This document shows, one piece after another, positions 1 through 12,463 of a DNA stretch of 12,463 nucleotides. The stretch comes from Fonticula alba ATCC 38817 (taxonomy: Eukaryota > Protista > Nucleariida). Positions within the stretch are counted from its first letter, which is position 1. The number at the start of each line of letters is the position of its first letter. The DNA lies in assembly GCA_000388065.2 (NCBI GenBank), contig KB932204.1. One strand, 5' to 3'. The translations under genes were made by a program, and so were the position numbers. Under the pieces are notes generated by a model. It was not told where the DNA came from, did not search any database, and saw nothing but the letters and a program-made list of their open reading frames with translations.

Positions 1-210
1 GCCGCGCACAACAATCGGACCCCCACAGACCAGGGCGCGGGGCGGCGGGGGGAGGGGGGGCAATCGGGCGGCCAGCGCGCGGCCGGGATCGGTTGGCAGT
101 TCAGGTGTATTCACGTGTTTCGCCGGCGGACAACCGAGCGGCCGGGCCGCGCACACGGCCCGGGGGGGGGGGGAGGGGAGGCCCGGCGACCGGAGGCCGC
201 CTTCTCCGCG

Positions 211-1803
211 CTAGGGCAGCAGCAGCGCGCGGCCGGCGTCGGCGAAGTTGCACAGCCCGGGGCCGGTGGCCGCGAGGATGACGCGCACGCCGGCGCGCTG
301 GCCGGCCAGGCGCAAGTCGGCCGCCTCGGCCGGGGTCGTTCCCCCGAGCAGGACCACCAGCAGGGTGGACGGTCCTCCGGTGGCCGAGGGGCCGGGCCCG
401 GGGCCGGGGCCGGGGCCGGGCTCGGCGCCAGCCGGCGGGGCGGGCTGCTCGGGCGCGCGGGGGTGGTCCGCCCGGCCGGCCGGCCGGGGCTCGGGCCCGG
501 TGGACGACGTGCGTGGCCGGCCGGCCGGGCTGGGCGGCTCGGGCCCGGGTGCCTGGCCGTCGGACCGGCCGGCGTCGGGCTCGGGGCCGCCCCCGAGCAG
601 GGTGCTGAGGATGGCCCGGCCGCCGCGGGCCAGAGCCCCGCCCGGGGGCAGGACCCCGGCGATGCGCGCCCGGCGCCCGGCCCCGGTCAGGTAGCTGCTC
701 AGGGCGGCCAGCGGCTGGTCCGGGGGCGAGGCGACGCCGGCCAGGCCGGGGGTGGCCGCCGGCCGGGCCCCGCCGGCCCGGGCCCCGCCCGGGTCCGATT
801 GGCCGGCCGCCCCGGCCGCCACCTCCAGCGGGTCCGGCGACCCGGCCGGCGAGAAGGGCGGCGCCCAGGAGCTGTTCATGGCCTCCGGCGGGTCCAGCAG
901 GCGGAGCTCCGCCCGGCGGTCCGGCAGCATTTGGCACAGGGCCACCAGGGCCCGGAAGATGGCCCCGGGCCCGGACAGATCGCCCGGGTGCTCGGCGGCC
1001 AGGTGGCTGGGGCCGCGCCGGACGCGGTCCAGCCGGGCCAGGACCCGGCTCGGCCCGGCCGGCCCGCCGAGCCCCGGCCACTGGCGCAGGCGCAGGGCCA
1101 GAGCCGCGTCGCGTCGGCGCCAGGCCGACTCCACGTCGCCGGCCGCGTCGCCGGCCGACCCCCCGGGCCCGGCCCCGAGCGCCGCCGCCGCCGCCAGAAA
1201 GGCCCCGCCCGAGCGCCGGGCCCCGGTGGCCCGCAGCCGGGCCAGGTGCCGGTCGCACGCCCCGAGCAGGCAGTACACCCAGCCGCAGAGGGCCAGCGCC
1301 AGGGGCAGGACCGCCCCGGCTGGCAGGGCCCCGGCCAGGGCGCCGAGCGTGTGGCCGCCGGCCTGCCCGGGCCCCGGCGCCCGGCGGCCCTTCCCCTGCG
1401 CCTCCTCCTCCTCCTCCGGCGGAGTCAGCGCATCCAGCACCTCCACCAGCTGGTCGAACACCTGGCTGATGACCGTGTCCAGGGCGTCCACCCCGGCCGG
1501 GCAGGACAGCAGGGTCGACAGCATGACCCGGCTGGCCGAGTGCAGGGCGTCAGCCAGGCGGTCCAGCAGGATGGCCCTGTGGCGGCCGGGGCAGGGCGAG
1601 GGGGGGGCGGGACAAAGTCAGCTACGGAGCCGGCGACGACCGAGGGCGAGCAACAAAAGCCGGGGCAAGAGGGGGGGGGGGACGTACTGCGGGTCAGAAA
1701 GGCGGGCTCGGAGCATGCGCGCCAGGGCCAGCAGCCCGGTTGGCGGGACGCCGGCCAGGGCAGTCTGCTCGATGATGGAGTCCAGCTGCTGCAGGGGCGA
1801 GCT
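211..1803 (-). CDS. SCFD2: SCFD2/MIP3-like SM protein, 3' part: exons 1803-1688 and 1576-211 (493 aa + TAG)
   Basis: Phase-0 acceptor CACAG at 1804 after a pyrimidine tract. Intron 1687-1577 (GTACGT...CAG, CTGAC branch near 1621-1617) rebuilds a CA|G Gln codon in frame. The C-terminus LLVVLLGGTTPAEAADLR...VRVILAAT matches the SM C-terminal motif (SCFD2 LLILFVVGGVTVSEVKMV...QVIVLST; Vps33-type GGxTxxE). PTGLLALARMLRARLSDPQ ~ HCGLLQLGLATAQTLKHPQ and LALCGWVYCLLG ~ LLILLIYIYSVTG (recalled human SCFD2). Stop TAG at 213-211. Confidence 0.7.
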
Positions 1804-1899
1804 CTGTGAAGTGGGCGGAGCAAAGGGGGGAGCAGAAAGTGAAGGAGCAGCAAAGAGCGAAGGGGCGGCAAATGGTAGCAGTAGAAGGGCAGCAGACAA

Positions 1900-1987
1900 C
1901 AAGTGAGCAGCAAGTGAGCAGCAAGTGAGCAGCAAGTGAGCAGCAAGTGAGCAGCAAGTGAGCAGCAAGTGAGCAGCAAGTGAGCAG
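1900..1987 (+). repeat. Tandem repeat (CAAGTGAGCAG)x8, truncated by an N gap
   Basis: Eight perfect 11-mers counted from 1900, ending at the gap at 1988. Lies in the acceptor-side part of the SCFD2-like intron 3. Confidence 0.95.
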
Positions 1988-1997
1988 NNNNNNNNNN
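1988..1997. other. Assembly gap (10 N)
   Basis: Run of 10 Ns between the 11-mer repeat and a G run. Confidence 0.99.
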
Positions 1998-2378
1998 GGG
2001 GGGGAGGCAATGCGGTGTTGCTCTCGCCGTGCGGAGCCCCGCGCCCTGCCGCCTTTCGAGGCTGGGCGCGTCAGGGCGCGTGCGCGCACGGCCCCCCACC
2101 CGGCCCGACACATCCGCACCCGAGCGCGCCGGCGCAACGCCCCCGGGCACAGGGCGCGATCTGCCCGGCCCCGCGCCGTTCTCGGCTCCCCCCCCGCCCC
2201 CCCCCACGCAGCAGGATGTTGTGTATGGCGGGGAAGGCGGCCCCCGATCGGGGCGCGGACGCGCCGAACAGTTGGCAGCTCGGTGTGTATATATACTCCC
2301 CCCCCCCGGCACAAACACACTCAAAGGGGATGGCGCCGCGGCGGAGGGAGAGAGGGGGCAAGGCGCGCGCACGCGCAC

Positions 2379-2430
2379 GGACACACAAACACACAGGCAC
2401 AGAAAGGGCATCTTTGCCGGGGGTTATTTT
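2379..2430 (-). terminator. Possible 3'-end processing signal of the DUF2009 gene
   Basis: On the minus strand, AAAATAAC (2430-2423) lies about 130 nt after the stop and is followed by a GT-rich tract (TGTGCCTGTGTGTTTGTGTGT). The hexamer is non-canonical. Confidence 0.25.
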
Positions 2431-2559
2431 GCTTTTTTTGTGGCCAGAGGAAGGAGGGAGGCGCGACCACGGCATCCCCCCCGGCTCCCCCCCCCCCCAT
2501 TGGGGAGGGCACACGACGGGGCAGATGCGCCTGCCCGCCGGAGGGGCATGCAAGAAGGG

Positions 2560-5500
2560 TCAGCCGTCGAAGTCCCCGTCGAAGCCGTACACCCCGGCCA
2601 GGCGGAAGAGCGGGTAGTAGTGCTTGCGCTCGATCTGCGAGCACCAGTTCCAGGTGCTGGTCAGGCGGCCGTCGACACAGGACCCGGCGTCGAAGAAGTT
2701 GTCGGCGCCGGCCCCGTCGAAGGCGTGGCGGAAGAAGTCCGTCAGGATGGTCCGGGTGGCATCCTGCACGGAGCCGAAGTTGTGCACGACGAAGGCCTCC
2801 AGCGGCTTGTTGCTGGCGCAGTTGAACTCCACATAGCGCAGGGTGGTGACCAGCGGCCCGAGGATGCGGGGGATCTGCATGTACTTGTCGATGAAGTGCA
2901 GGGCATTGGGCACATTGTGGTCGCCCAGGTGCACCACCGACGAGCCGATCCACTGGTGCGACAGGCGCGACTGGACCTTGTGAATGATGGTCTGAATGGC
3001 GCGGTACAGGCGCGGGGCGGGCTGCACCCGCTGCACCCCCTGGCCGGTGTTCTGCAGCCGGTAGGGCCGGACCTTCATGTCCAGCAGGTCCTCCTCGGCC
3101 ATCATCCACAGCTGGTACATGTGGTGGAGGATCTCCCGCCAGAGGGTCAGCGACTGCAGGACAAAGTGGAACTGCTGGGTGTGCGAGTGCGACAGCCGGG
3201 CCTGGTTCTCCCCGGCCCGGATGGCCAGCGAGAACCGGTCCTGCAGCGGGGCGCTCGGATTGAAGTTGGTGTTCAGGTAGGTGATCATCATGTCCACCAG
3301 GTCACGGCTGTACGTGAGGAAGGCGTTGTGGTCGCCGAGTGAGAGGATGCAGAGCTCGATCTGGGTTGGTGTGGTGTGTGGGGTTGGGGGGGGGCCGGGG
3401 GAGGAGGAAGTAAAGCGAGGCGAAGTGAGGGGAAGTGAGGGGAAGTGAGGGGAAGTGAGGGGAAGTGAGGGGAAGTGAGGGGAAGTGAGGCAAGGTAAGA
3501 CAAGGCAAGGCAGGACAAGACAAGACAAGGCAAGGCAAGGCAAGGCAAGACAAGGAAAAAAAGACAAGGCAAAGCGAAGCAAAATAAAACAAGGAAGGGC
3601 AACGGAAAAAAAGACAAGGCAAAGCGAAGCAAAATAAAACAAGGAAGGGCAAGGGAAAAAAAGACAAGGAAAAAAGACCAAACACGGAGGAGAGCCAGAT
3701 CAAAAATCGGAGGACAGCCAGGTCAGAGCACGGAGGTCAAAAGGCGGGACAGGAGGCACATGGCATGCCCGGGGGAAAGGGGAGCGATGGCAGGGAGGGA
3801 GACCCGGGCGGCGGCCGCGGCGATGGTCGCACCTCCTCCGGGCTGATCTCCTCGTTGGCGTGCTTGCGGCTCAGGTCGGCGATGGCCCGACGCTTGAGGG
3901 CCACATCGCGATCGATCTCGGCCCGGGTGAGCGACGAGTAGGGGGAGATCACCTGGATGGCGTAAATGAGCAGCGGGTCCTCCAGCAGGGCCAGCGCCCC
4001 GAAGGCCTCCAGGTACGAGTGCACCGTCTTGATGGGCGCCACCAGGGAGAAGTCCAGGGCGTCGGCCACCTCCGGCAGGCTGGAATCCTGCAGCAGCAGC
4101 ATCATGGTCCCGTAGGAGGTGCGCATGCGGTCGGGGTTCATGATCTTGAAGCGCCGGGCCACCTCGAAGGCCGCCTCGAAGTAGGGGGCGCGCTCCTTGA
4201 AGTCCAGGTCCCGGGCCAGGCGCGCGGCGTACTTGTAATCCGTCGACACGGCCAGGCTCAGGAGGATGGCGCACACGGCATTGATCTGGACGGATGGCCG
4301 GCCGGCCGGCAGGGGACCACGAGGGCGGGCAGGGCAGCGGCCGAGGTTAGACCGGGGGGAGGGGCGGCGCAGGGAAGGGGGCAAGCAGGGGCGCCGGCAG
4401 GGGCGCCGGCAGGGGCGCCGGCAGGGGCGCCGGCATGCGCGGCCCGCCAGGCCAAGGCCATCGGCACAGGGAGCGCCCCCCAGGGGGGCGGGGGGACCGA
4501 GGCACGTACACTGCGCTTGATGCGGCTGACCTTGCGCGTGGGGTCGTCCGCCTTGTCGGCGTAGTTGCTCACATGGAAGGTGCTCTCCACCAGGCGCAGG
4601 AAGTCCCGCTCTTCGTCATTCAGCCGGACGGGCACGAACTTGGCGCGTTCCATGAGCTCGCGCAGCTCGCCGGTGCTGGCGGCCACCGACCGGGCCAGGG
4701 CCTCGACATTGCGCAAGTCGGCCGGCTCGGCCGGGGCGGCCCCCCCGGGGACACCGTCCGGCGAGAGGGACGGCCGGCCGCTGGCCGGCTGCGACCCGGC
4801 CCCGGAGGACTGCGAGAAGGAGGCCCGGCCGCCGGTGGGGGTGCCCGGCCGGTCGGACGGCGCCGCACCCGGGTCCGGCAAGTTTTCCACCCCCATGCCA
4901 TTGATGGACTCCATGGTCAGCTGGCCGTTGAGGAGCTGGCGCCAGGTGTGCAGGCGCCGGCGCCCGGACCGGTGGACAACCTCGAAGCAGGCATTGCAGA
5001 AGGACTCCTTGCACACGACGCAATAGACCGACGAGGGCCCGGCACAGTCGATGCAGGTGTGCAGCTCCGGGCCGCCGGGGCCGGGGCCGCTTCCGCCGGC
5101 CGACGGCGGCCCCGGGGCCAGGTACGTGGACAGGGGGCTGGCATCGGCCGCCGGGCCGGCCGGCGCCGCCCCCCCGGCGGGGTCCGGCCCGAAGAGGTGG
5201 GCGTCGGCTTGCGACGGCCGCCCCGGCCGGCGGAAGGGGCGCCCGGCCCGCGCCGGCCCGCGCGAGGAGTCGCCACTCTCGGAGTCCGAGTCATCCGGCC
5301 CCGGGGCCGGGGCCGGCGCCGCCCCGAGGAAGGACCCGATGTAGCTGAAGAGCGAGGCCAGCACCCCGGCCGGCGGGTCGGGCAGCGGGTCGGACGAGCT
5401 CAAGTCCGAGGCCGACAGCAGCGGCCGCGGGGAGATCGACCGCACGGAGGAGGTCGACGACCGGGAGTTGAAGGAGGCCGTGGAGTTGGACGGCGAGGGC

Positions 5501-5673
5501 GACCGGCGCATGAGTCCGGACGACCGGGGCTGCAGGTCGCCGGCCATGCCGCCGAGGGGGGCCGCCGTGCCGAAGGGGCCCGCCGGCGGGACGGTCAGCG
5601 ACTGCGACCGGGGCCGGCTGCTGTCGCCGAGGTGCGCGCGCCCCGGGGGCGGGGGGCCTTCGAGCCCGGACAT
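2560..5673 (-). CDS. B-box zinc finger + DUF2009/UPF0652-family protein; exons 5673-4510, 4285-3833, 3360-2560 (about 805 aa)
   Basis: Introns 4509-4286 (GTACGT...CAG, CTAAC branch 4350-4346) and 3832-3361 (GTGCGA...CAG) are both phase 0. Spliced joins read RIKRS|INAVCAIL and ISPEE|IELCILSLGDHNAFL. Family-typical motifs: FVPVRLNDEERDFLRLVE, ARLSHSH, TGQGVQRVQ, WIGSSVVHLGDHNVPNALHFIDKY, FFRHAFDGAGADNFFDAGSCVDGRLTSTWNWCS, GFDGDF. TGA at 2562-2560. The true start could lie further upstream because the frame is open into the N gap. Confidence 0.88.
3422..3490 (+). repeat. Tandem repeat (GAAGTGAGGG) about x7 in DUF2009 intron 2
   Basis: Direct reading of a 10-bp period. Confidence 0.95.
3491..3669 (+). 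repeat. (CAAGG/CAAGA)n pentamer tract followed by a 50-bp tandem duplication (3551-3600, 3601-3650, partial 3651-3669) in DUF2009 intron 2
   Basis: GGAAAAAAAGACAAGGCAAAGCGAAGCAAAATAAAACAAGGAAGGGC recurs at a 50-bp spacing. Confidence 0.9.
4385..4435 (+). repeat. Tandem repeat (GCAGGGGCGCCG)x4 in DUF2009 intron 1
   Basis: Four 12-mers at 4385, 4397, 4409 and 4421. Confidence 0.93.
4948..5055 (-). other. B-box-type zinc finger coding segment within the DUF2009 gene
   Basis: CIDCAGPSSVYCVVCKESFCNACFEVVHRSGRRRLH has C-x2-C-x7-C-x2-C-x4-C-x2-C-x4-H-x7-H spacing, which is B-box-like. Confidence 0.8.
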
Positions 5674-5715
5674 GCTGGCGGGGGCGAGGGGGGGAGGTGC
5701 AGGGGGGCGAGGGGG

Positions 5716-6644
5716 NNNNNNNNNNNNNNNNNNNNNNNNNNNNNNNNNNNNNNNNNNNNNNNNNNNNNNNNNNNNNNNNNNNNNNNNNNNNNNNNNNNNN
5801 NNNNNNNNNNNNNNNNNNNNNNNNNNNNNNNNNNNNNNNNNNNNNNNNNNNNNNNNNNNNNNNNNNNNNNNNNNNNNNNNNNNNNNNNNNNNNNNNNNNN
5901 NNNNNNNNNNNNNNNNNNNNNNNNNNNNNNNNNNNNNNNNNNNNNNNNNNNNNNNNNNNNNNNNNNNNNNNNNNNNNNNNNNNNNNNNNNNNNNNNNNNN
6001 NNNNNNNNNNNNNNNNNNNNNNNNNNNNNNNNNNNNNNNNNNNNNNNNNNNNNNNNNNNNNNNNNNNNNNNNNNNNNNNNNNNNNNNNNNNNNNNNNNNN
6101 NNNNNNNNNNNNNNNNNNNNNNNNNNNNNNNNNNNNNNNNNNNNNNNNNNNNNNNNNNNNNNNNNNNNNNNNNNNNNNNNNNNNNNNNNNNNNNNNNNNN
6201 NNNNNNNNNNNNNNNNNNNNNNNNNNNNNNNNNNNNNNNNNNNNNNNNNNNNNNNNNNNNNNNNNNNNNNNNNNNNNNNNNNNNNNNNNNNNNNNNNNNN
6301 NNNNNNNNNNNNNNNNNNNNNNNNNNNNNNNNNNNNNNNNNNNNNNNNNNNNNNNNNNNNNNNNNNNNNNNNNNNNNNNNNNNNNNNNNNNNNNNNNNNN
6401 NNNNNNNNNNNNNNNNNNNNNNNNNNNNNNNNNNNNNNNNNNNNNNNNNNNNNNNNNNNNNNNNNNNNNNNNNNNNNNNNNNNNNNNNNNNNNNNNNNNN
6501 NNNNNNNNNNNNNNNNNNNNNNNNNNNNNNNNNNNNNNNNNNNNNNNNNNNNNNNNNNNNNNNNNNNNNNNNNNNNNNNNNNNNNNNNNNNNNNNNNNNN
6601 NNNNNNNNNNNNNNNNNNNNNNNNNNNNNNNNNNNNNNNNNNNN
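5716..6644. other. Assembly gap (929 N)
   Basis: Run of Ns upstream of the DUF2009 ATG. Confidence 0.99.
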
Positions 6645-6940
6645 ACAAACCGTCGGCAGGGGCGGGGAGGCGGCGAGCGCAGACAGGAGGGCAGGGCGCG
6701 CGAGGGGGAGGAAGCAGGGCGTGGGAGCAGGAGGGAGGCTTGACGCGATCCCGGCGCCCGGTCGGGCCGCTGGGGTCCCGGCGCGGCCCCGGCTTTTCGG
6801 CAAAAGAGCCAGGCAGCACCGGACGAAGGACGCGCCCGGCCCCTCGTCGGCACGGCCGCGGTGACAGATCCCCCCCAGCGCCCGGCGCCCGGCGCCCGGG
6901 GGAAAACAAACGCCCGGAGCCCAACTGCCGCCGCATGCCC

Positions 6941-7007
6941 GTGACGCGCGCACGTGACGCGCGGCTGGACCATAACTGGCGGACCTGAGGCCGAGTTAAA
7001 GGTTTAA
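6941..7007. promoter_or_regulatory. Candidate core of a divergent promoter region between the DUF2009 gene and the plus-strand gene
   Basis: GTGACGCGCG direct repeat (6941, 6954) overlapping an E-box CACGTG (6951-6956), plus an AT-rich inverted-repeat island TTAAA-GG-TTTAA (6996-7007) in otherwise GC-rich DNA between head-to-head genes. Function is inferred only. Confidence 0.3.
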
Positions 7008-7399
7008 GTGTGCGGCGGTTGAGGGCTAGGCCGGCGCCCGGGGGCCCGCCTCACCCACATTCGCCTCCTGCCAGATCTTCGCGGCTTGCCCTTCCGCCCT
7101 CCTGCCTGCCGCCCGCCTGGGCCGCTCCCGCCCTGCGCCCGTCTTACCGGCGCACCCGCGCATACACACACGCACACACACACGAGGACAGGCACGCCGT
7201 CGCGTGGCCCCTCGCGCCCCTCGGCTCTAGCCCGCGCTCGCCGGTGCCCCGAGGCCCTGTCCGCGGCGGCGCGTCCCCCCCCCCCCCCCCCCACACACAC
7301 ACACCCGGCCCCTGACCTCGTGCCGAGCCGGTCAAGGGGCCCGCCTGACGATTCCCGGCCGAGTCCGGCGTCTCCGCCCCCTTTCCCGGCCGCCCGAGC

Positions 7400-8616
7400 A
7401 TGGGCGACTTCCTTTCCTACCAGGCCCGGCGAGGGCCGTGGTGCGAGTGCCGGCTGCGTGACCGGCCGACGGCCGGCGACCCGGCCGGGCGCTTCCGCTG
7501 CGGCGACCCGGCCCGGTCGGTGCCGTGCCGCTGCGCATGGCGCGCCGGCCCCGGGCCCGGGGACAAGCACGGCGCGGCCCCCAGCGCCTCGGTGGCCCTC
7601 AAGCCCAATGTGGCCTGCCTCCGGCGACATGATGATTGCTGTGCGTGTGAGGGCGGGAAAAAAAAGGAAGACTGCTCACGCCCAAGCGGGGGGAGGAGGG
7701 GGAGGTGACATCGCGCTCGGGGGCCCTCGCCGCGCCACACGGGCGGGAAACTAACACGCGGCATGCCGGGTCGGCGGCGACGGCGGCGGTGCGGTGCAGA
7801 CGGCTCGGCCGCCACGCCCCTGGGCCCGGTGGACCTGGTGACGGTGGCCTACGCCCGGGACGATGCCATCGGCCGGGCCTTTGTCCAGCGGGAGTCGGGG
7901 AAGTTCCGGGCCCCGGGGCCCGGGGGAGGCCCGGCAGCCGGCCCGCGCCGGGGCGCCAGCTCGTACATGCACATGGTGGTGCCGGCCGAGGGCCCGGGGC
8001 CCGGGGCCGGGGGCCACCCGCTGACGCGCGAGCGCCCGGCCAGCCCGGCCCCGGGCCCCGGGCCCGGCGCCCCGGGCACCTGGGCCAGCTCCTTCCTGGC
8101 CCTGCCCACCTCGCTGTCGCAATACCTCCGGGGGGACCTCTCCCGGTCGGGGTCGCAGTCGACCGAGCTGCCGGGGGCCGGCGAGGGGCCGGACGCCGGG
8201 CCGGCCGAGCCCGACCCCGGGCCCACGCCGGACCGGTGGCCGGACGACTGGAACTGGGCCGACCCTGGCGAGTGGGAGCACAGCTCCGGCCCGGAGGGCG
8301 GCGGCGTGGTGGAGGTGCTGCACGCGCTGGCCGGGCCCGGGTCGCCGCGCGACCCGGCCTCCTTCGCGGCCTTCGCCATGGGGCTGCTCCGGGAGCACCC
8401 GTTCGCCCGGGGCCCGGAGCCGGGCCCCGGGTCGACGGCCTCCTCGCTCGGGCCGTCGCCCAGCCCGTCGGCCGGGCGCCTGCCGCGCGGCGGCCTCGCC
8501 GGCGGCAACGGCGACGGCGGCGGCGGCGGCGGTGACCGGTCGCGCCCGGGCCTCGGGGCCCTGCTGGACCGGGTGTGGTCGGGGGCCGGGGCCGGGCGCG
8601 GGCCGAGGGCCGGGCT

Positions 8617-8647
<31 letters not shown>

Positions 8648-9171
8648 CGCGACCCGGCCGACCGCCGGCCCATGCCGGCCCCGGCCGAGGACCCGGACCC
8701 GGAGCCCCGGCCGCCGGAGACCGCCGAGGAGGCCCGCGTGCGCCGGGAGCTGCAGCTGGGCATGGGCCCGGCCGGGGGGCCGGGGCTGCTGGGCCCCGGG
8801 GCCCCGGGGCCCCGGTGCGACTCGCGCTGCTGCGGGGCCGGCCTGCAGCTGGCCGACGTGCCCGGCCAGCGGCCCGACTCGCCGGCCGACTGCAACCTCC
8901 CGGCGTGGGCCGGCCACGCGGCCCCGGTGCTGGCCCGGCTGTACACCTTCGACCTGCTCCGCCGGCGGGACATCTGCGTGGAGGTGTGCTTTGTGGGCCG
9001 GCCGCGCGGGTCCCTGGCCCGGGGGGTGGGCCTCCGGTGCTTCACGGTCGACCCGCAGGATCCCAGCGTCTTGTGCGTCTTGGCGGCCCGGCGCGCGCCG
9101 GGAGGGAGCAGGGGGGCAGGGGGGGCAACACGCGGGCCTGGGTCGCCGCACACACACACACACACGCACAC

Positions 9172-9202
<31 letters not shown>

Positions 9203-9988
9203 GATGCACATGGATGGCGCACTGACCGCGGAGCGCGCCCGGACGCCGGCCAGCCACCCGGTCGACCCGCAGGACGCGGAGTGCTGGCGCCGGGTGGCCC
9301 TGTCGAAGGACCTGCGCGAGGGGGCCCTGCGGGGGGTGCTGCGCGACGCGGCCGCCGTCAGCCCGGCCTGGTTCAGCCTCGTCCGGTGGCTGGAGGGCCC
9401 GGGGCCGGGGGCCGGGCCGACGCCGGCGCCGCTGGAGGCGGCCCGGCTGCTGGGCCGCGCCGGCACCGCCCCGCCGCCGCTGGCCGCCGCGGCCCTCGAG
9501 GCCCCCACCGGGTCCGGGCTGGACCTGGACCCGGGCCCGGGGTCGACCGCCGCCGGTGCCGCCGCCGCCGCCGCCGATGCCGATGCCGATGCCGATGCCG
9601 ACGCCCCGCCGGCCCCGGCCGATGTGGCCGCGCCGGTGTCCCGGGCCGCGGTCATCTGGGCCGCGGTCCTGGCCGCCGGCGACCCGGTCAGCCCGCCAGG
9701 TACGTCAATGCCCGACCGCTCGCCCCCGGCGCCTGCCGTCGTGTACTTACGCCGATGGACGCTGCGGCCATGGCGCCCGCGCCCGGTGCGCCCGGACGCC
9801 CAGACCCCCCGGCCGGCCGGCGCACGCCGCCGATCGAGGCGCACCTGGCCGCGGCACTGCGCACGCTGGCCAACCCGCAGGCCGGCTGGGCCCGGCCGGC
9901 CCCGCTGCTGTCGCCGCCGGACCCCGACGAGCAGGAGGCCTACCACACGCTGCTGCTGCTGGCCGAGGCGGCGCACCGTCTGAGCAGG
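7400..9988 (+). CDS. Hypothetical protein, 3'-incomplete; exons 7400-7640, 7800-9072, 9254-9699, 9804-9988 (715 codons, no stop seen)
   Basis: ATG at 7400, with an in-frame upstream TGA at 7346. Introns 7641-7799 (GTGCGT, CTAAC 7751-7755, CAG; phase 1, T|AC = Tyr), 9073-9253 (GTGCGT, CTGAC 9222-9226, CAG; phase 2) and 9700-9803 (GTACGT...CAG; phase 1) all restore one continuous frame. A fourth donor GTACGC at 9989 opens a CA-rich intron that runs into the gap with no acceptor. No family recognised. Confidence 0.7.
9149..9202 (+). repeat. (CA)n microsatellite in intron 2 of the plus-strand gene
   Basis: CA run with two CG interruptions. Confidence 0.95.
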
Positions 9989-10037
9989 GTACGCCCGGCC
10001 GCCCGCCCTCCCCCTTGTCCCGCCGGCATGCTAACGT

Positions 10038-10181
10038 ACACACACGCCCACATGCACACGTACATACACACGTACATACATACGTACATACACACGTACA
10101 TACACACGTACATACACACGTACATGCACACGTACATACACGCACACGTCCATACACACACGCACACGTGCATACACACAC
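10038..10181 (+). repeat. CA-rich minisatellite, unit about CACACGTACATA, truncated by an N gap
   Basis: 12-bp period (translates HTYI-HTYI) downstream of the donor at 9989. Confidence 0.88.
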
Positions 10182-10191
10182 NNNNNNNNNN
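10182..10191. other. Assembly gap (10 N)
   Basis: Run of 10 Ns between the CA-rich repeat and the 29-mer repeat. Confidence 0.99.
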
Positions 10192-10385
10192 CAGTAAGTG
10201 AGCAGCAGACAACAAACAAACAGTAAGTGAGCAGCAGACAACAAACAAACAGTAAGTGAGCAGCAGACAACAAACAAACAGCAAGTGAGCAGCAGACAAC
10301 AAACAAACAGCAAGTGAGCAACAGACAGCAAGTGAACAGCAAGTGAGCAACAGACAGCAAGTGAACAGCAAGTGAGCAGCAAACA
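10192..10385 (+). repeat. Tandem repeat, 29-bp unit CAG(T/C)AAGTGAGCAGCAGACAACAAACAAA (about 4 copies) decaying into CAAGTGA(G/A)CA variants
   Basis: Units start at 10192, 10221, 10250, 10279 and 10308. Shares AAGTGAGCAG and GCAGCAGACAACAA with 1889-1987. Lies in the donor-side part of the SCFD2-like intron 3. Confidence 0.9.
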
Positions 10386-10501
10386 GCAAATGGCCAGCAA
10401 GGGGAAGGACAGGCAGGAGGCGCAGGAACCCAAGTCAGACACGGGCACCAGGCGGCGAAAGAACACCCACCGACAGCCCAGACAGGACACCCCACACGCA
10501 C

Positions 10502-12423
10502 CTTGGACAGGGACACGCCGGAGGCGCGCGCCAGATTGTCCAGCACATAGGACAGCGTGGTGGCGGCCGGCTGGGCCAGCACCGCACACAGGGACACCGA
10601 GGACCCGGGCCCGGGCAGGTCCACCAGGCAGTCGGCCACCGACAGCCCGGTGAAGAGGGCGGCCCGGGGGGGCGCGGCGTCCAGCCGGGCCGGCGCCCCG
10701 CCCGGGGCCACACCCCCCGGCCGGAGGACCGGCACACTCAGGGGGAAGTGCCCGGGCTGGAGGAAGGCCAGGACCTGGGGCCCCTCGGCCGCCGGGTCCT
10801 CGGCGTCGGGCGACGGCCCGGCCACGGGCTCCAGGCCGGCCATGGACGACACCGAGGCCAGGGCCCGGCTGATGAGGCTGGGATCCGGCCCGAAGACCGG
10901 GCTCCAGTCGGCCGACTGCCGGGGCCGGCGGAGAAGGGGGCGGCGCGGCGCCGGTGTCAGCGCCACAGGACAGCCGGGCACAGGGCCCGAGGAAAGGCAA
11001 GCAACGGCAAACCAGGGGCAAGTAGGTGTGTGGGCTTGGCACGCACGCGGTCCACCACCAGGACGGTCACGGCGCCGGGCGAGTGCCCCGGCGCCGGGGC
11101 CGAGTCACGCAGGCGCCCAAGCAGCGCCGGGTCCTCGGCCACCGAGGACGCCGTCGGCAAGGGGACCCCATCGCGCAGGAGCGACAGGACCAGGGCCGCC
11201 TGGCGCCCGGCCAGGTCGCCCAAGCCGTGGATGGCCCCGATGGAGGCCGCCGGGGGGGCCGGCTGCCCGGGCGTGGCGGCCGCCCGGCCGAAGGCCGCCG
11301 CCGACCGGAACCAGTCGAACACCGCCAAGCCGGCGCGCAGGGCGATCTGGCCCGGGCGTTGCACATGCGATTGTGTGTGCGTGTGCGTGTGTGTGAGAGA
11401 GAGAGGGAGAGGGAGAGGGAGAGAGAGACACCAGCGGGGGGCCGGCGTCGGGCGCAGGCGGAGGATGAGCATCATGCCGGGGCACAAGGGACCCCGGGCG
11501 GTCGGGCGCGGGCGTACCTCCGACGCCAGCGGCCGGTCGGCCTGCGGGCACAGCCGGAGCAGCAGCTCCGGGCCAACATCGGCCAGCAGCGGCAGGTGAA
11601 AGAGCCAGCCCGGGGCGGGAGCGGCGGCGGCGGCGGCGGCGGCGGCGGCCATGGCGGCCATGGCGGCGGCCCCCGGCGGCGGCGCCCGCATGCCGATGGC
11701 CGACACGCACAGCGGCCAGTGCTCGACCGTCACCGAGGGCAGGGCCGCCCCCGGGTCCAGGTCCCGGGCGATCGAGGCCGCCAGCACCCGGGCCACGTCG
11801 CGGAAGCGCAGGAGGTTCTGCTCCTGCGGGGGGCCCGGCCGGTCGGCCCCGGGCCCCGGGGACCCGGCCGGCGCCCGGCCCGCGGTCTGGTACGAGTGGT
11901 GGCTGCTGCGCAGGCAGCACAGGATGCGCACCGAGGAGAAGGCGGCCCCCGGGCCGGGGCGGCCGCCGGCCCGGGCCGTGCCCCGGCGCAGCCGCGAGAA
12001 CACCACCCCGGAGATGTGCTCCAGCGTCGGGTACTTCAGGTCGCGCACCAGGAAGAGCAGCTGCGCCTGCGGGCCGTCCAGCTGGCCGAGATCCGCCTCG
12101 GCGGGGCCGGGCTCGGGCCGGGGCCCGGCCGGGGCCGGCCCGTCAGCCGGGCCCAGCCGCGGGCTCAGCCGGCCCCGGCCCTCCAGGCAGTACACCCCGG
12201 ACAGGAGGGCCCCGCGCAGGAGCCCCGGCGAGCTGAGGAACCCGGGCCAGCCCCAGGAGCTGGCCACCGCCTGGTAGGCGAAGGAGTCCACGTACAGGTG
12301 GACCACCGTGCGGGCGGCCGGCGGCCCGGCCCCCGGCGCGGCGGCCACCGCCTCGTCCACTTGCCAGGCGTGGCCCAGGACTCGGCCGCACCAGGCGGCC
12401 ACCGGCAGGACCGAGAGCGGCAT
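10502..12423 (-). CDS. SCFD2: Sec1/Munc18 (SM) family protein, SCFD2/MIP3-like, 5' part: exons 12423-11518, 11346-11047, 10915-10502 (540 codons, no stop)
   Basis: ATG at 12423. Introns 11517-11347 (GTACGC...CAG) and 11046-10916 (GTGCGT...CAG, GCTGAC branch near 10961-10956) are both phase 0. Splicing creates VLVVDR|SADWSPVF, which matches the SM-family 'DR(S/T)xD' motif (human SCFD2 VVFVDRTLDL, from memory). Other colinear blocks by eye: HLYVDSFAYQAVASSWG ~ VVYLDAACAESLHWGCG; SVTVEHWPLCVSAI ~ TAEVFHVPLLLAPV; IHGLGDLAGRQAALV ~ CFAVGSLSQVIAADL. Exon 3 ends at a phase-0 GTGCGT donor at 10501. Family assignment is by recalled sequence, not a database search. Confidence 0.7.
11372..11428 (+). repeat. 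Compound (TG)n-(GA)n microsatellite in SCFD2-like intron 1
   Basis: Direct reading. Confidence 0.9.
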
Positions 12424-12463
12424 TGCCCGGGCGCCGGGGGAGAGCGGGGGGGGGGGGGGGGGG

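What the first reader, a model, noticed from the sequence alone, without database searches (positions are those of the whole stretch)
211..12423. One SCFD2-like SM gene split around two other genes: giant intron with nested genes, or a mis-scaffold
Seen: the exons at 12423-10502 have no stop, and the exons at 1803-211 have no convincing start. The donor at 10501 (GTGCGT) and the acceptor at 1804 are both phase 0, and joining them gives ...GVSLSK|SSPLQQLDSIIEQ... in a continuous ORF of about 1033 aa. Knowledge: the halves follow recalled human SCFD2 colinearly, with the junction near ENLPIKMSMGRVTPGQLMSYIQ. Inference: intron 3 would be 8,698 nt, against 104-472 nt for the eight complete introns here, and would hold an antisense gene and a same-strand DUF2009 gene with its own introns and 3' end. 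If real, that is an unusual architecture in which transcription must read through an internal same-strand terminator. I consider an assembly artefact somewhat more likely (see the next finding).
Basis: partly seen in the sequence, partly recalled or inferred. Interest (0 to 1): 0.8.

Follow-up and report, generated by a model that had tools for sequence, protein, structure and literature searches.

The report
Split membrane-fusion gene is an assembly artefact
The two halves are almost certainly one ordinary five-exon gene for a very divergent Sec1/Munc18-like protein in Fonticula alba, and it looks wrapped around two other genes only because small contigs were scaffolded in the wrong order.

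Summary
Joining 12423-10502 to 1803-211 on the minus strand gives one stop-free 1033-aa frame, with phase-0 splice sites at 10501 and 1804. The architecture is an artefact.

- **Setting.** The window is four small contigs (D 1-1987, C 1998-5715, B 6645-10181, A 10192-12463) in Fonticula alba scaffold KB932204.1. It lies between a 3075-N gap and a gap of at least 9960 N.
- **False join.** The left end of C overlaps, by 32 exact bases and in the same orientation, the end of the CENP-S contig lying beyond D. D therefore cannot sit between them, and the join at gap 1988-1997 is false.
- **Shared repeat.** A and D both end in the same CTGCTCACTTG / TTGTTGTCTGCTGC array, found nowhere else in 22 kb.
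- **Unfinished neighbour.** The plus-strand gene on B ends in an intron with no AG before the gap.
- **Expression.** Four RNA runs hold both halves at exon-only word shares.

Intron 3 is therefore probably about 0.5 kb plus hidden repeat units.

The protein is Sec1-like on weak evidence: a sub-threshold Pfam match and Atlas features. SCFD2 identity could not be tested. GenBank splits the gene into H696_02679 and H696_02676. Earlier notes of this scan report other mis-ordered contigs in this genome.

The parts
11518..12423 (-). SM-like gene exon 1 (302 codons, ATG at 12423)
   Evidence: Identical to residues 1-302 of annotated H696_02679.
11047..11346 (-). Exon 2 (100 codons), ending in VLVVDR
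10502..10915 (-). Exon 3 (138 codons), no stop, donor GTGCGT at 10501
   Evidence: Its last 28 codons are missing from the annotated protein.
10192..10501 (-). 5' part of intron 3, ending at the gap in a 29-nt tandem array (10192-10390) that contains CTGCTCACTTGCTG and TTGTTGTCTGCTGC
   Evidence: RNA runs hold about exon-only word shares of 10192-12423.
10182..10191 (.). 10-N gap between contigs B and A. Probably not a true adjacency.
7401..10181 (+). Plus-strand orphan gene (H696_02678): exons 7401-7644, 7800-9072, 9273-9700, 9806-9988, then an unfinished intron that runs into the gap
   Evidence: There is no AG in 9989-10181. No Pfam family matches. The annotated CDS runs across the gap to 10197.
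5716..6644 (.). 929-N gap between contigs C and B
2560..5673 (-). Complete B-box + DUF2009 gene (H696_02677, 805 aa): exons about 5673-4511, 4288-3836, 3363-2563, plus the stop
1998..2029 (+). First 32 nt of contig C, identical to the last 32 nt of the CENP-S contig (window coordinates -3106 to -3075)
1988..1997 (.). 10-N gap between contigs D and C. False adjacency.
1804..1987 (-). 3' part of intron 3: eight perfect CTGCTCACTTG units (1900-1987), then TTGTTGTCTGCTGC, a pyrimidine tract and the acceptor CACAG
1688..1803 (-). Exon 4 (116 nt)
211..1576 (-). Exon 5 with stop. Its last ~65 residues match the C-terminal end of the Pfam Sec1 profile.
92..118 (-). ATACACC..CTGCCAAC motif about 100 nt downstream of the stop. 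Candidate 3'-end signal.
   Evidence: The RNA word share of contig D fits a transcript end near position 100.

Best explanation
This is one expressed gene of Fonticula alba with five exons. It encodes a 1033-aa, low-complexity-rich and very divergent Sec1/Munc18-like protein. Its third intron carries a tandem-repeat array that short reads could not cross, so the gene fell onto two contigs of about 2 kb each: A with exons 1-3 and D with exons 4-5. In a scaffold region that is half N, the scaffolder put D on the wrong side of the 8.2-kb C-B block. That block carries the DUF2009 gene and an orphan gene. As a result the SM gene appears to enclose them. The real intron 3 is most likely 494 nt plus the unassembled repeat units. 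Contig C really continues into the CENP-S contig. The annotators then closed each half with an invented terminal exon, which produced H696_02679 and H696_02676. Shown here: the continuous frame, the wrong order at 1988-1997, the shared array, and expression of both halves. Inferred: the direct A-D adjacency, the splice 10502|1803 in RNA, and the SM function.
For: 1. **Continuous frame.** The joined frame is 1033 aa with phase-0 sites. The N-terminal half has no stop before the gap, and the C-terminal half has no start at its acceptor.
2. **Contig overlap.** The right end of the contig at window -4244..-3075 (CENP-S) and the left end of contig C share 32 exact nt in the same orientation. This is the only suffix-prefix overlap of 12 nt or more among the 7 contigs in all orientations, and its 25-mer core occurs only at these two ends. 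A 1987-nt contig plus a 3075-N gap cannot lie between overlapping contigs.
3. **Shared array.** A and D abut their gaps with the same repeat family on the same strand. They share 16-mers and a second 14-mer block in the same order, absent from the rest of the window and from 9.8 kb of flank.
4. **Unfinished gene on B.** The plus-strand gene on B ends in an intron with no AG and no in-frame stop before the gap. The annotated stop lies beyond the gap.
5. **Gap-rich setting.** The contigs are 2.0-3.7 kb, and 16 kb of the surrounding 32 kb is N. Both gaps flanking the block have the apparent floor value of 10 N.
6. **RNA word shares.** RNA runs X3-X6 hold 0.63-0.71 of the words of 10192-12423. The exon-only expectation is 0.695, and 0.836 if the intron flank were transcript. 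They hold 0.75-0.79 of contig D. The exon-only expectation is 0.78 with a 3' end near 100, and 0.88 with the intron flank.
7. **Invented terminal exons.** The 20-aa tail of H696_02679 is read from intron 3 (10497-10435). The MCRAGWG head of H696_02676 lies at 2113-2093, inside contig C.
8. **Intron size.** The eight complete introns here are 105-472 nt.
9. **Sec1 resemblance.** Pfam Sec1 matches the C-terminus at profile positions 504-565 of 575 (E 0.007). In the Atlas feature search, 97 of 100 neighbours of the C-terminal half are Sec1 family domain-containing clusters (score 0.92, 178 shared features). The two nearest structural neighbours of the N-terminal half are a 968-aa cluster, which is also a feature neighbour of the C-terminal half, and an 831-aa Sec1 cluster.
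Against: The A and D arrays do not overlap exactly: the units nearest the gap on A read CTTACTG, those on D read CTTGCTG. CTCACTT arrays are not unique to this intron; the DUF2009 intron has CCCCTCACTT units. The overlap proves the scaffold wrong but does not place D: D could lie left of the CENP-S contig. The Sec1 evidence is below Pfam's threshold (16.1 against 30.7 bits), and the N-terminal half has no sequence-level match to anything.
Confidence: 0.85

Rival explanations
1. True nesting. Intron 3 is a giant intron that really contains the orphan gene and the DUF2009 gene. Because C continues into the CENP-S contig, it would have to contain the CENP-S gene as well, making it longer than 10 kb, with D lying further left than scaffolded.
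For: D and A keep the correct relative order and orientation in the scaffold. The overlap does not by itself say where D belongs.
Against: Its only support was the scaffold order, and that is shown wrong at one of its two joins. The same array would have to flank both ends of the insert. The plus-strand gene would have to finish inside a '10-N' gap. The SM transcript would have to read through two or three complete genes and a same-strand 3'-end motif at 2271-2278. All eight complete introns here are 472 nt or shorter.
Confidence: 0.05
2. Gene fission. The two halves are separate genes, as annotated, each making its own protein.
For: GenBank annotates them as H696_02679 and H696_02676.
Against: The N-terminal half has no stop at the end of exon 3, and the annotated tail is read from intron sequence that the RNA runs do not hold. 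The C-terminal half begins at an acceptor site, and its annotated start exon lies on a contig that belongs elsewhere. The Sec1 C-terminal element lies in the C-terminal half, while the VLVVDR strand (recalled as SM-typical, not tested here) lies in the N-terminal half, so neither half would be a complete SM fold.
Confidence: 0.04
3. One gene, and the scaffold is wrong, but A and D are not joined by a short intron. Substantial unassembled sequence lies between them: more exons, or a long repeat-filled intron.
For: The arrays do not overlap exactly, and their unit variants differ at the gap edges. The region is full of large gaps.
Against: The frame closes exactly across 10502|1803 in phase 0 with no residues missing at first sight. 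Local introns are short.
Confidence: 0.06

Closest known systems
Contig mis-ordering in short-read, mate-pair scaffolds
   Same: Small contigs break at tandem repeats and homopolymers. Gaps take a floor size. Genes appear scrambled but are restored by re-ordering the contigs. Neighbouring contig ends overlap although they were placed apart. Earlier notes of this scan describe the same pattern elsewhere in this genome.
   Different: Nothing unusual. The exact true position of D and A was not established.
Sec1/Munc18 (SM) proteins, Pfam PF00995
   Same: The C-terminal element matches the end of the Sec1 profile. The language-model neighbours of the C-terminal half are Sec1 clusters. The N-terminal half has an alternating strand-helix pattern and a VLVVDR strand, which I recall as typical of SM domain 2 (the resemblance is from memory).
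   Different: The match is far below Pfam's threshold. There is no match to solved Munc18, Sly1, Vps33 or Vps45 chains at E up to 10. There is no homologue at E <= 0.001 among 1.84 billion representatives. At 1033 aa with long Ala/Gly/Pro-rich inserts, it is much longer than canonical SM proteins.
SCFD2 / plant MIP3, the SM-like partner of the NRZ/Dsl1/MAG2 tether (PMC4206994)
   Same: Both are non-canonical, divergent SM-like proteins outside the four well-conserved SM families (PMC1810245). The top Atlas clusters carry the name stem 'Sec1 family domain-containing protein'.
   Different: No SCFD2 or MIP3 sequence could be compared here, so orthology is untested.
Nested genes inside introns, as known in animals
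   Same: As scaffolded, complete genes lie between two exons of a host gene.
   Different: The host-to-guest links are N gaps, one of them demonstrably false. This is not an instance.

Membership tests
Nested (intronic) gene architecture | Uninterrupted sequence linking host exons to the enclosed genes on both sides | tested here: not met
   Both links are 10-N gaps. The left end of contig C overlaps another contig by 32 exact nt, so the D|C join is false.
Nested (intronic) gene architecture | Host transcript spliced across the enclosed genes | tested here: inconclusive
A spliced read would not in any case distinguish nesting from a mis-scaffold.
Sec1/Munc18 superfamily (PF00995) | Match to the Sec1 profile above the curated cut-off | tested here: not met
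   Only 16.1 bits (cut-off 30.7), E 0.007, covering profile positions 504-565 of 575 in the C-terminal half. Nothing for the N-terminal half.
Sec1/Munc18 superfamily (PF00995) | Three-domain SM fold | tested here: inconclusive
   AlphaFold2 without an alignment gave mean pLDDT 38 for the N-terminal half. The Atlas model of the N-terminal half has TM 0.37-0.41 to a Sec1 cluster and to a 968-aa cluster. The C-terminal half has feature score 0.92 with 178 shared features, and 97 of 100 neighbours are Sec1.
Canonical SM families (Sec1/Munc18, Sly1, Vps45, Vps33) | Readily detectable sequence similarity to family members (PMC1810245 calls them highly conserved) | tested here: not met
   No solved SM chain is matched at E up to 10 by either half.
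SCFD2 / MIP3 | Orthology: reciprocal best match or a clade with SCFD2/MIP3 | not testable with these tools
   No SCFD2 sequence was obtainable. All sequence searches returned only the protein itself.
SCFD2 / MIP3 | Association with the NRZ/Dsl1/MAG2 tethering complex | not testable with these tools
   This is a biochemical property (PMC4206994).

The most novel reading that the evidence does not exclude
The SM-like gene really has an intron longer than 10 kb enclosing three complete, independently expressed genes (the orphan gene, DUF2009 and CENP-S) in a compact genome whose introns are otherwise about 0.1-0.5 kb. A tandem array was split by the insertion.
Probability: 0.05. Interest if true: 0.6.

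Novelty: not a real feature. Interest (0 to 1): 0.12.

Why it matters
There is little biology in the split itself. Its practical value is as a correction:
- H696_02679 and H696_02676 should be merged into one 1033-aa model.
- The 3' end of H696_02678 is invalid.
- This part of scaffold KB932204.1 is out of order.

The merged protein is a real, expressed, extremely divergent Sec1/Munc18-like protein in a close relative of fungi. If it proves to be an SCFD2/MIP3 orthologue, it would help date that little-studied SM-like family. That identification remains open.

Tried and rejected
- **Reads.** They were only read inside local scripts (where the probe was 10142-10181 only).
- **Metagenome contigs.** A protein scan with the C-terminal half and an exact 26-mer from exon 4 both found nothing.
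- **Sequence homology.** Three searches found only the proteins themselves: phmmer of the C-terminal half against 1.84 billion representatives, a word-indexed search with the N-terminal ORF, and one with the C-terminal 82 residues at E up to 10. A first attempt with a larger E-value limit was rejected by the tool.
- **Solved structures.** No SM chain was matched.
- **Structure prediction.** AlphaFold2 on the N-terminal half without an alignment was unusable (pLDDT 38), so no fold search was run.
- **Atlas.** A search on residues 270-512 of the N-terminal half gave only chance-level neighbours.
- **Exact look-up.** The 437-aa genomic ORF of exon 5 is not on record in public contigs, so no independent contig could be fetched.
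- **Missing 3' end of the plus-strand gene.** I looked for it on neighbouring contigs using the microsatellite flank and found no match.
- **Considered and dropped.** The left end of D might carry that gene's last exon. The frame is open, but the peptide looks non-coding.
Full report
**What is in the window.** The sequence is about 80% G+C in coding parts. It comes from Fonticula alba, scaffold KB932204.1 of assembly GCA_000388065.2. On the minus strand I read five exons: 12423-11518, 11346-11047, 10915-10502, 1803-1688 and 1576-214, with the stop at 213-211. A script joined them into 3099 nt, or 1033 codons without a stop. The junction is ...ASGVSLSK|SSPLQQLDSIIEQ. The donor is AAG|GTGCGT at 10501 and the acceptor is CACAG| at 1804, both phase 0. 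As scaffolded, intron 3 is 8698 nt, against 105-472 nt for the eight complete introns in the window.

**What lies between the halves.** From 5673 to 2560 on the minus strand lies a complete gene. Its three exons match the Pfam DUF2009 profile colinearly (positions 1-39, 48-195 and 198-455; E 2.5e-7, 1e-38 and 1e-113), and it also has a B-box. It is annotated as an 805-aa protein. From 7401 on the plus strand lies an orphan gene with no Pfam match. Its exons are 7401-7644, 7800-9072, 9273-9700 and 9806-9988. After 9988 comes a GTACGC donor and a CTAAC motif. There is no AG anywhere up to the gap at 10182, and no in-frame stop. The annotated 715-aa model simply reads through this intron, a microsatellite and the 10 N to a TAA at 10195-10197. 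That gene is therefore unfinished at the end of its contig.

**The scaffold around the window.** Fetching 10 kb on each side showed that the window is an island. Immediately left of position 1 are 3075 N. Immediately right of 12463 are at least 9960 N. About 16 kb of the surrounding 32 kb is N, in gaps of 10, 929, 10, 3075, 2050, 10, 42 and at least 9960. The SM-like gene therefore lies on two small contigs: D (1-1987) and A (10192-12463). The inner block is contigs C (1998-5715) and B (6645-10181). Three of the eight gaps are exactly 10 N and none is shorter, so 10 looks like a floor value. It is not a measured distance.

**The decisive observation.** I compared all contig ends in all orientations. 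The contig left of the 3075-N gap, at window coordinates -4244 to -3075, carries the CENP-S gene. It ends in a run of eleven G followed by AGGCAATGCGGTGTTGCTCTCGCCG. Contig C begins with seven G followed by the same 25 letters. This is a 32-nt exact suffix-prefix overlap in the same orientation. It is the only overlap of 12 nt or more among the seven contigs, and the 25-mer occurs only at those two ends. With per-base match odds of about 0.31 at this composition, 25 matching bases by chance is of the order of 1e-13. So contig C continues leftwards into the CENP-S contig, the break being at a G homopolymer. That join also makes biological sense: about 640 nt would separate the DUF2009 stop from the CENP-S start, with both genes on the minus strand. 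A 1987-nt contig and a 3075-N gap cannot lie between two overlapping contigs. The D|C join at 1988-1997 is therefore false, and contig D is misplaced.

**The repeat at the two outer gap edges.** In transcript orientation, contig A ends in units of CTGCTCACTT(G/A)CTGTTTGTTTGTTGTCTG. Contig D begins with eight perfect CTGCTCACTTG units, followed by CTGCTCACTTGTTGTCTGCTGC and then unique sequence, a pyrimidine tract and the acceptor. The two sides share 16-mers and a second block, TTGTTGTCTGCTGC, in the same order and on the same strand. These words occur nowhere else in the window or in 9.8 kb of flank. This is what one array broken by the assembler looks like, and I tested and confirmed the sibling note s1-066678 here. 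One caveat applies: a different array carrying CTCACTT (unit CCCCTCACTT) sits in a DUF2009 intron, so the seven-letter core is a general feature of introns here. Only the longer units are specific. The inner edges of the gaps show no such repeat.

**Expression.** I therefore have no read across the junction. The run index still gives indirect evidence:
- Four RNA runs of the same organism hold 0.63-0.71 of the sampled words of 10192-12423. The exon-only expectation is 0.695. It would be 0.836 if the intron flank 10192-10501 were part of the transcript.
- The same runs hold 0.75-0.79 of contig D. The exon-only expectation is 0.78 with a 3' end near position 100. It would be 0.88 with the intron flank.

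Both halves are thus expressed in the same libraries. The sequence beyond the donor and before the acceptor is not in the mature RNA. This argues against the annotated ends.

**The annotation.**
- H696_02679 (532 aa) equals my model for 512 residues. It then takes 20 residues from intron 3 (10497-10435).
- H696_02676 (501 aa) equals my model for its last 493 residues. It starts with MCRAGWG, encoded at 2113-2093. That lies in contig C, within what is really the DUF2009-CENP-S spacer.
- Twenty-eight codons at the end of exon 3 are in neither protein.

**What the protein is.**
- The C-terminal half has a sub-threshold Pfam Sec1 match at its very end: residues 425-485 against profile positions 504-565 of 575, 16.1 bits against a cut-off of 30.7, E 0.007.
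- In the ESM Atlas, 97 of its 100 nearest feature neighbours are Sec1 family domain-containing clusters. The best scores 0.92 with 178 shared features.
- The N-terminal half has no sequence match to anything.
- The Atlas model of the N-terminal half has two nearest structural neighbours: a 968-aa cluster, which is also a feature neighbour of the C-terminal half, and an 831-aa Sec1 cluster (TM 0.41 and 0.37).
- The N-terminal half contains VLVVDR, which I recall as the SM domain-2 strand motif.
- AlphaFold2 without an alignment was unusable (pLDDT 38).
- phmmer of the C-terminal half against 1.84 billion representatives found only itself. Neither half matches any solved SM chain at E up to 10.

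The four canonical SM families are described as highly conserved and easily detected (PMC1810245). This protein is therefore not a canonical member. A divergent SCFD2/MIP3-type protein, the SM-like partner of the NRZ/Dsl1/MAG2 tether (PMC4206994), is a reasonable guess. I could not fetch any SCFD2 sequence to test it. I put about 85% on SM-like and no more than about 50% on SCFD2 orthology.

**Verdict.** The split architecture is an assembly artefact. I put about 95% on the scaffold order being wrong at 1988-1997. I put about 85% on A and D being neighbours across one intron of roughly 0.5 kb plus hidden repeat units. True nesting would now have to include the CENP-S contig as well, and I put it at about 5%. 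Earlier notes of this scan list several other out-of-order contig sets in this genome. They include TMEM120 19 kb away (s1-065692), and one case where a follow-up reached the same reading (s1-065347). I did not check those.

Noticed in passing
window 92-118 and 2271-2297 (minus strand): A shared motif, ATACAC(C)..GA.CTGCCAAC, occurs exactly twice in 22 kb. Each copy lies 110-290 nt downstream of a minus-strand stop codon (the SM-like gene and the DUF2009 gene). It may be the 3'-end or poly(A) signal of Fonticula alba.
   Followed up: partly
window 1900-1987, 10192-10390, 3413-3490: Intronic tandem arrays carry CTCACTT on the transcribed strand in two different genes. The core resembles the CTRAC branch-point-like motifs that lie 20-50 nt upstream of the other acceptors in the window. 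These may be expanded branch-point regions.
   Followed up: no
window 7400-10197 (plus strand): Annotated H696_02678 (715 aa) takes its C-terminus by reading through an unfinished intron, a microsatellite and the 10-N gap. Its true last exon or exons are missing from this scaffold region. The protein has no Pfam family.
   Followed up: partly
L001 12114-21903 (window coordinates -9789 to 0) and L002 1-9960: About half of the 32 kb around the window is N, with contigs of only 1.2-3.7 kb. An annotated C2-domain gene crosses another 10-N gap at window -8082 to -8073, so some 10-N joins may be correct.
   Followed up: no
runs X2, X7-X11, X17, X18: A 2022 soil metagenome holds 0.80 and 0.46 of the words of the two gene halves. 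Runs of another organism from 2025 and sludge and sediment metagenomes hold smaller shares. Near-identical Fonticula DNA therefore exists in independent samples that could settle the contig order.
   Followed up: no
window 12446-12463, 1998-2004, and contig ends in L001: Most contig ends here are G or C homopolymers or tandem repeats. This points to a systematic short-read drop-out as the cause of the fragmentation.
   Followed up: no
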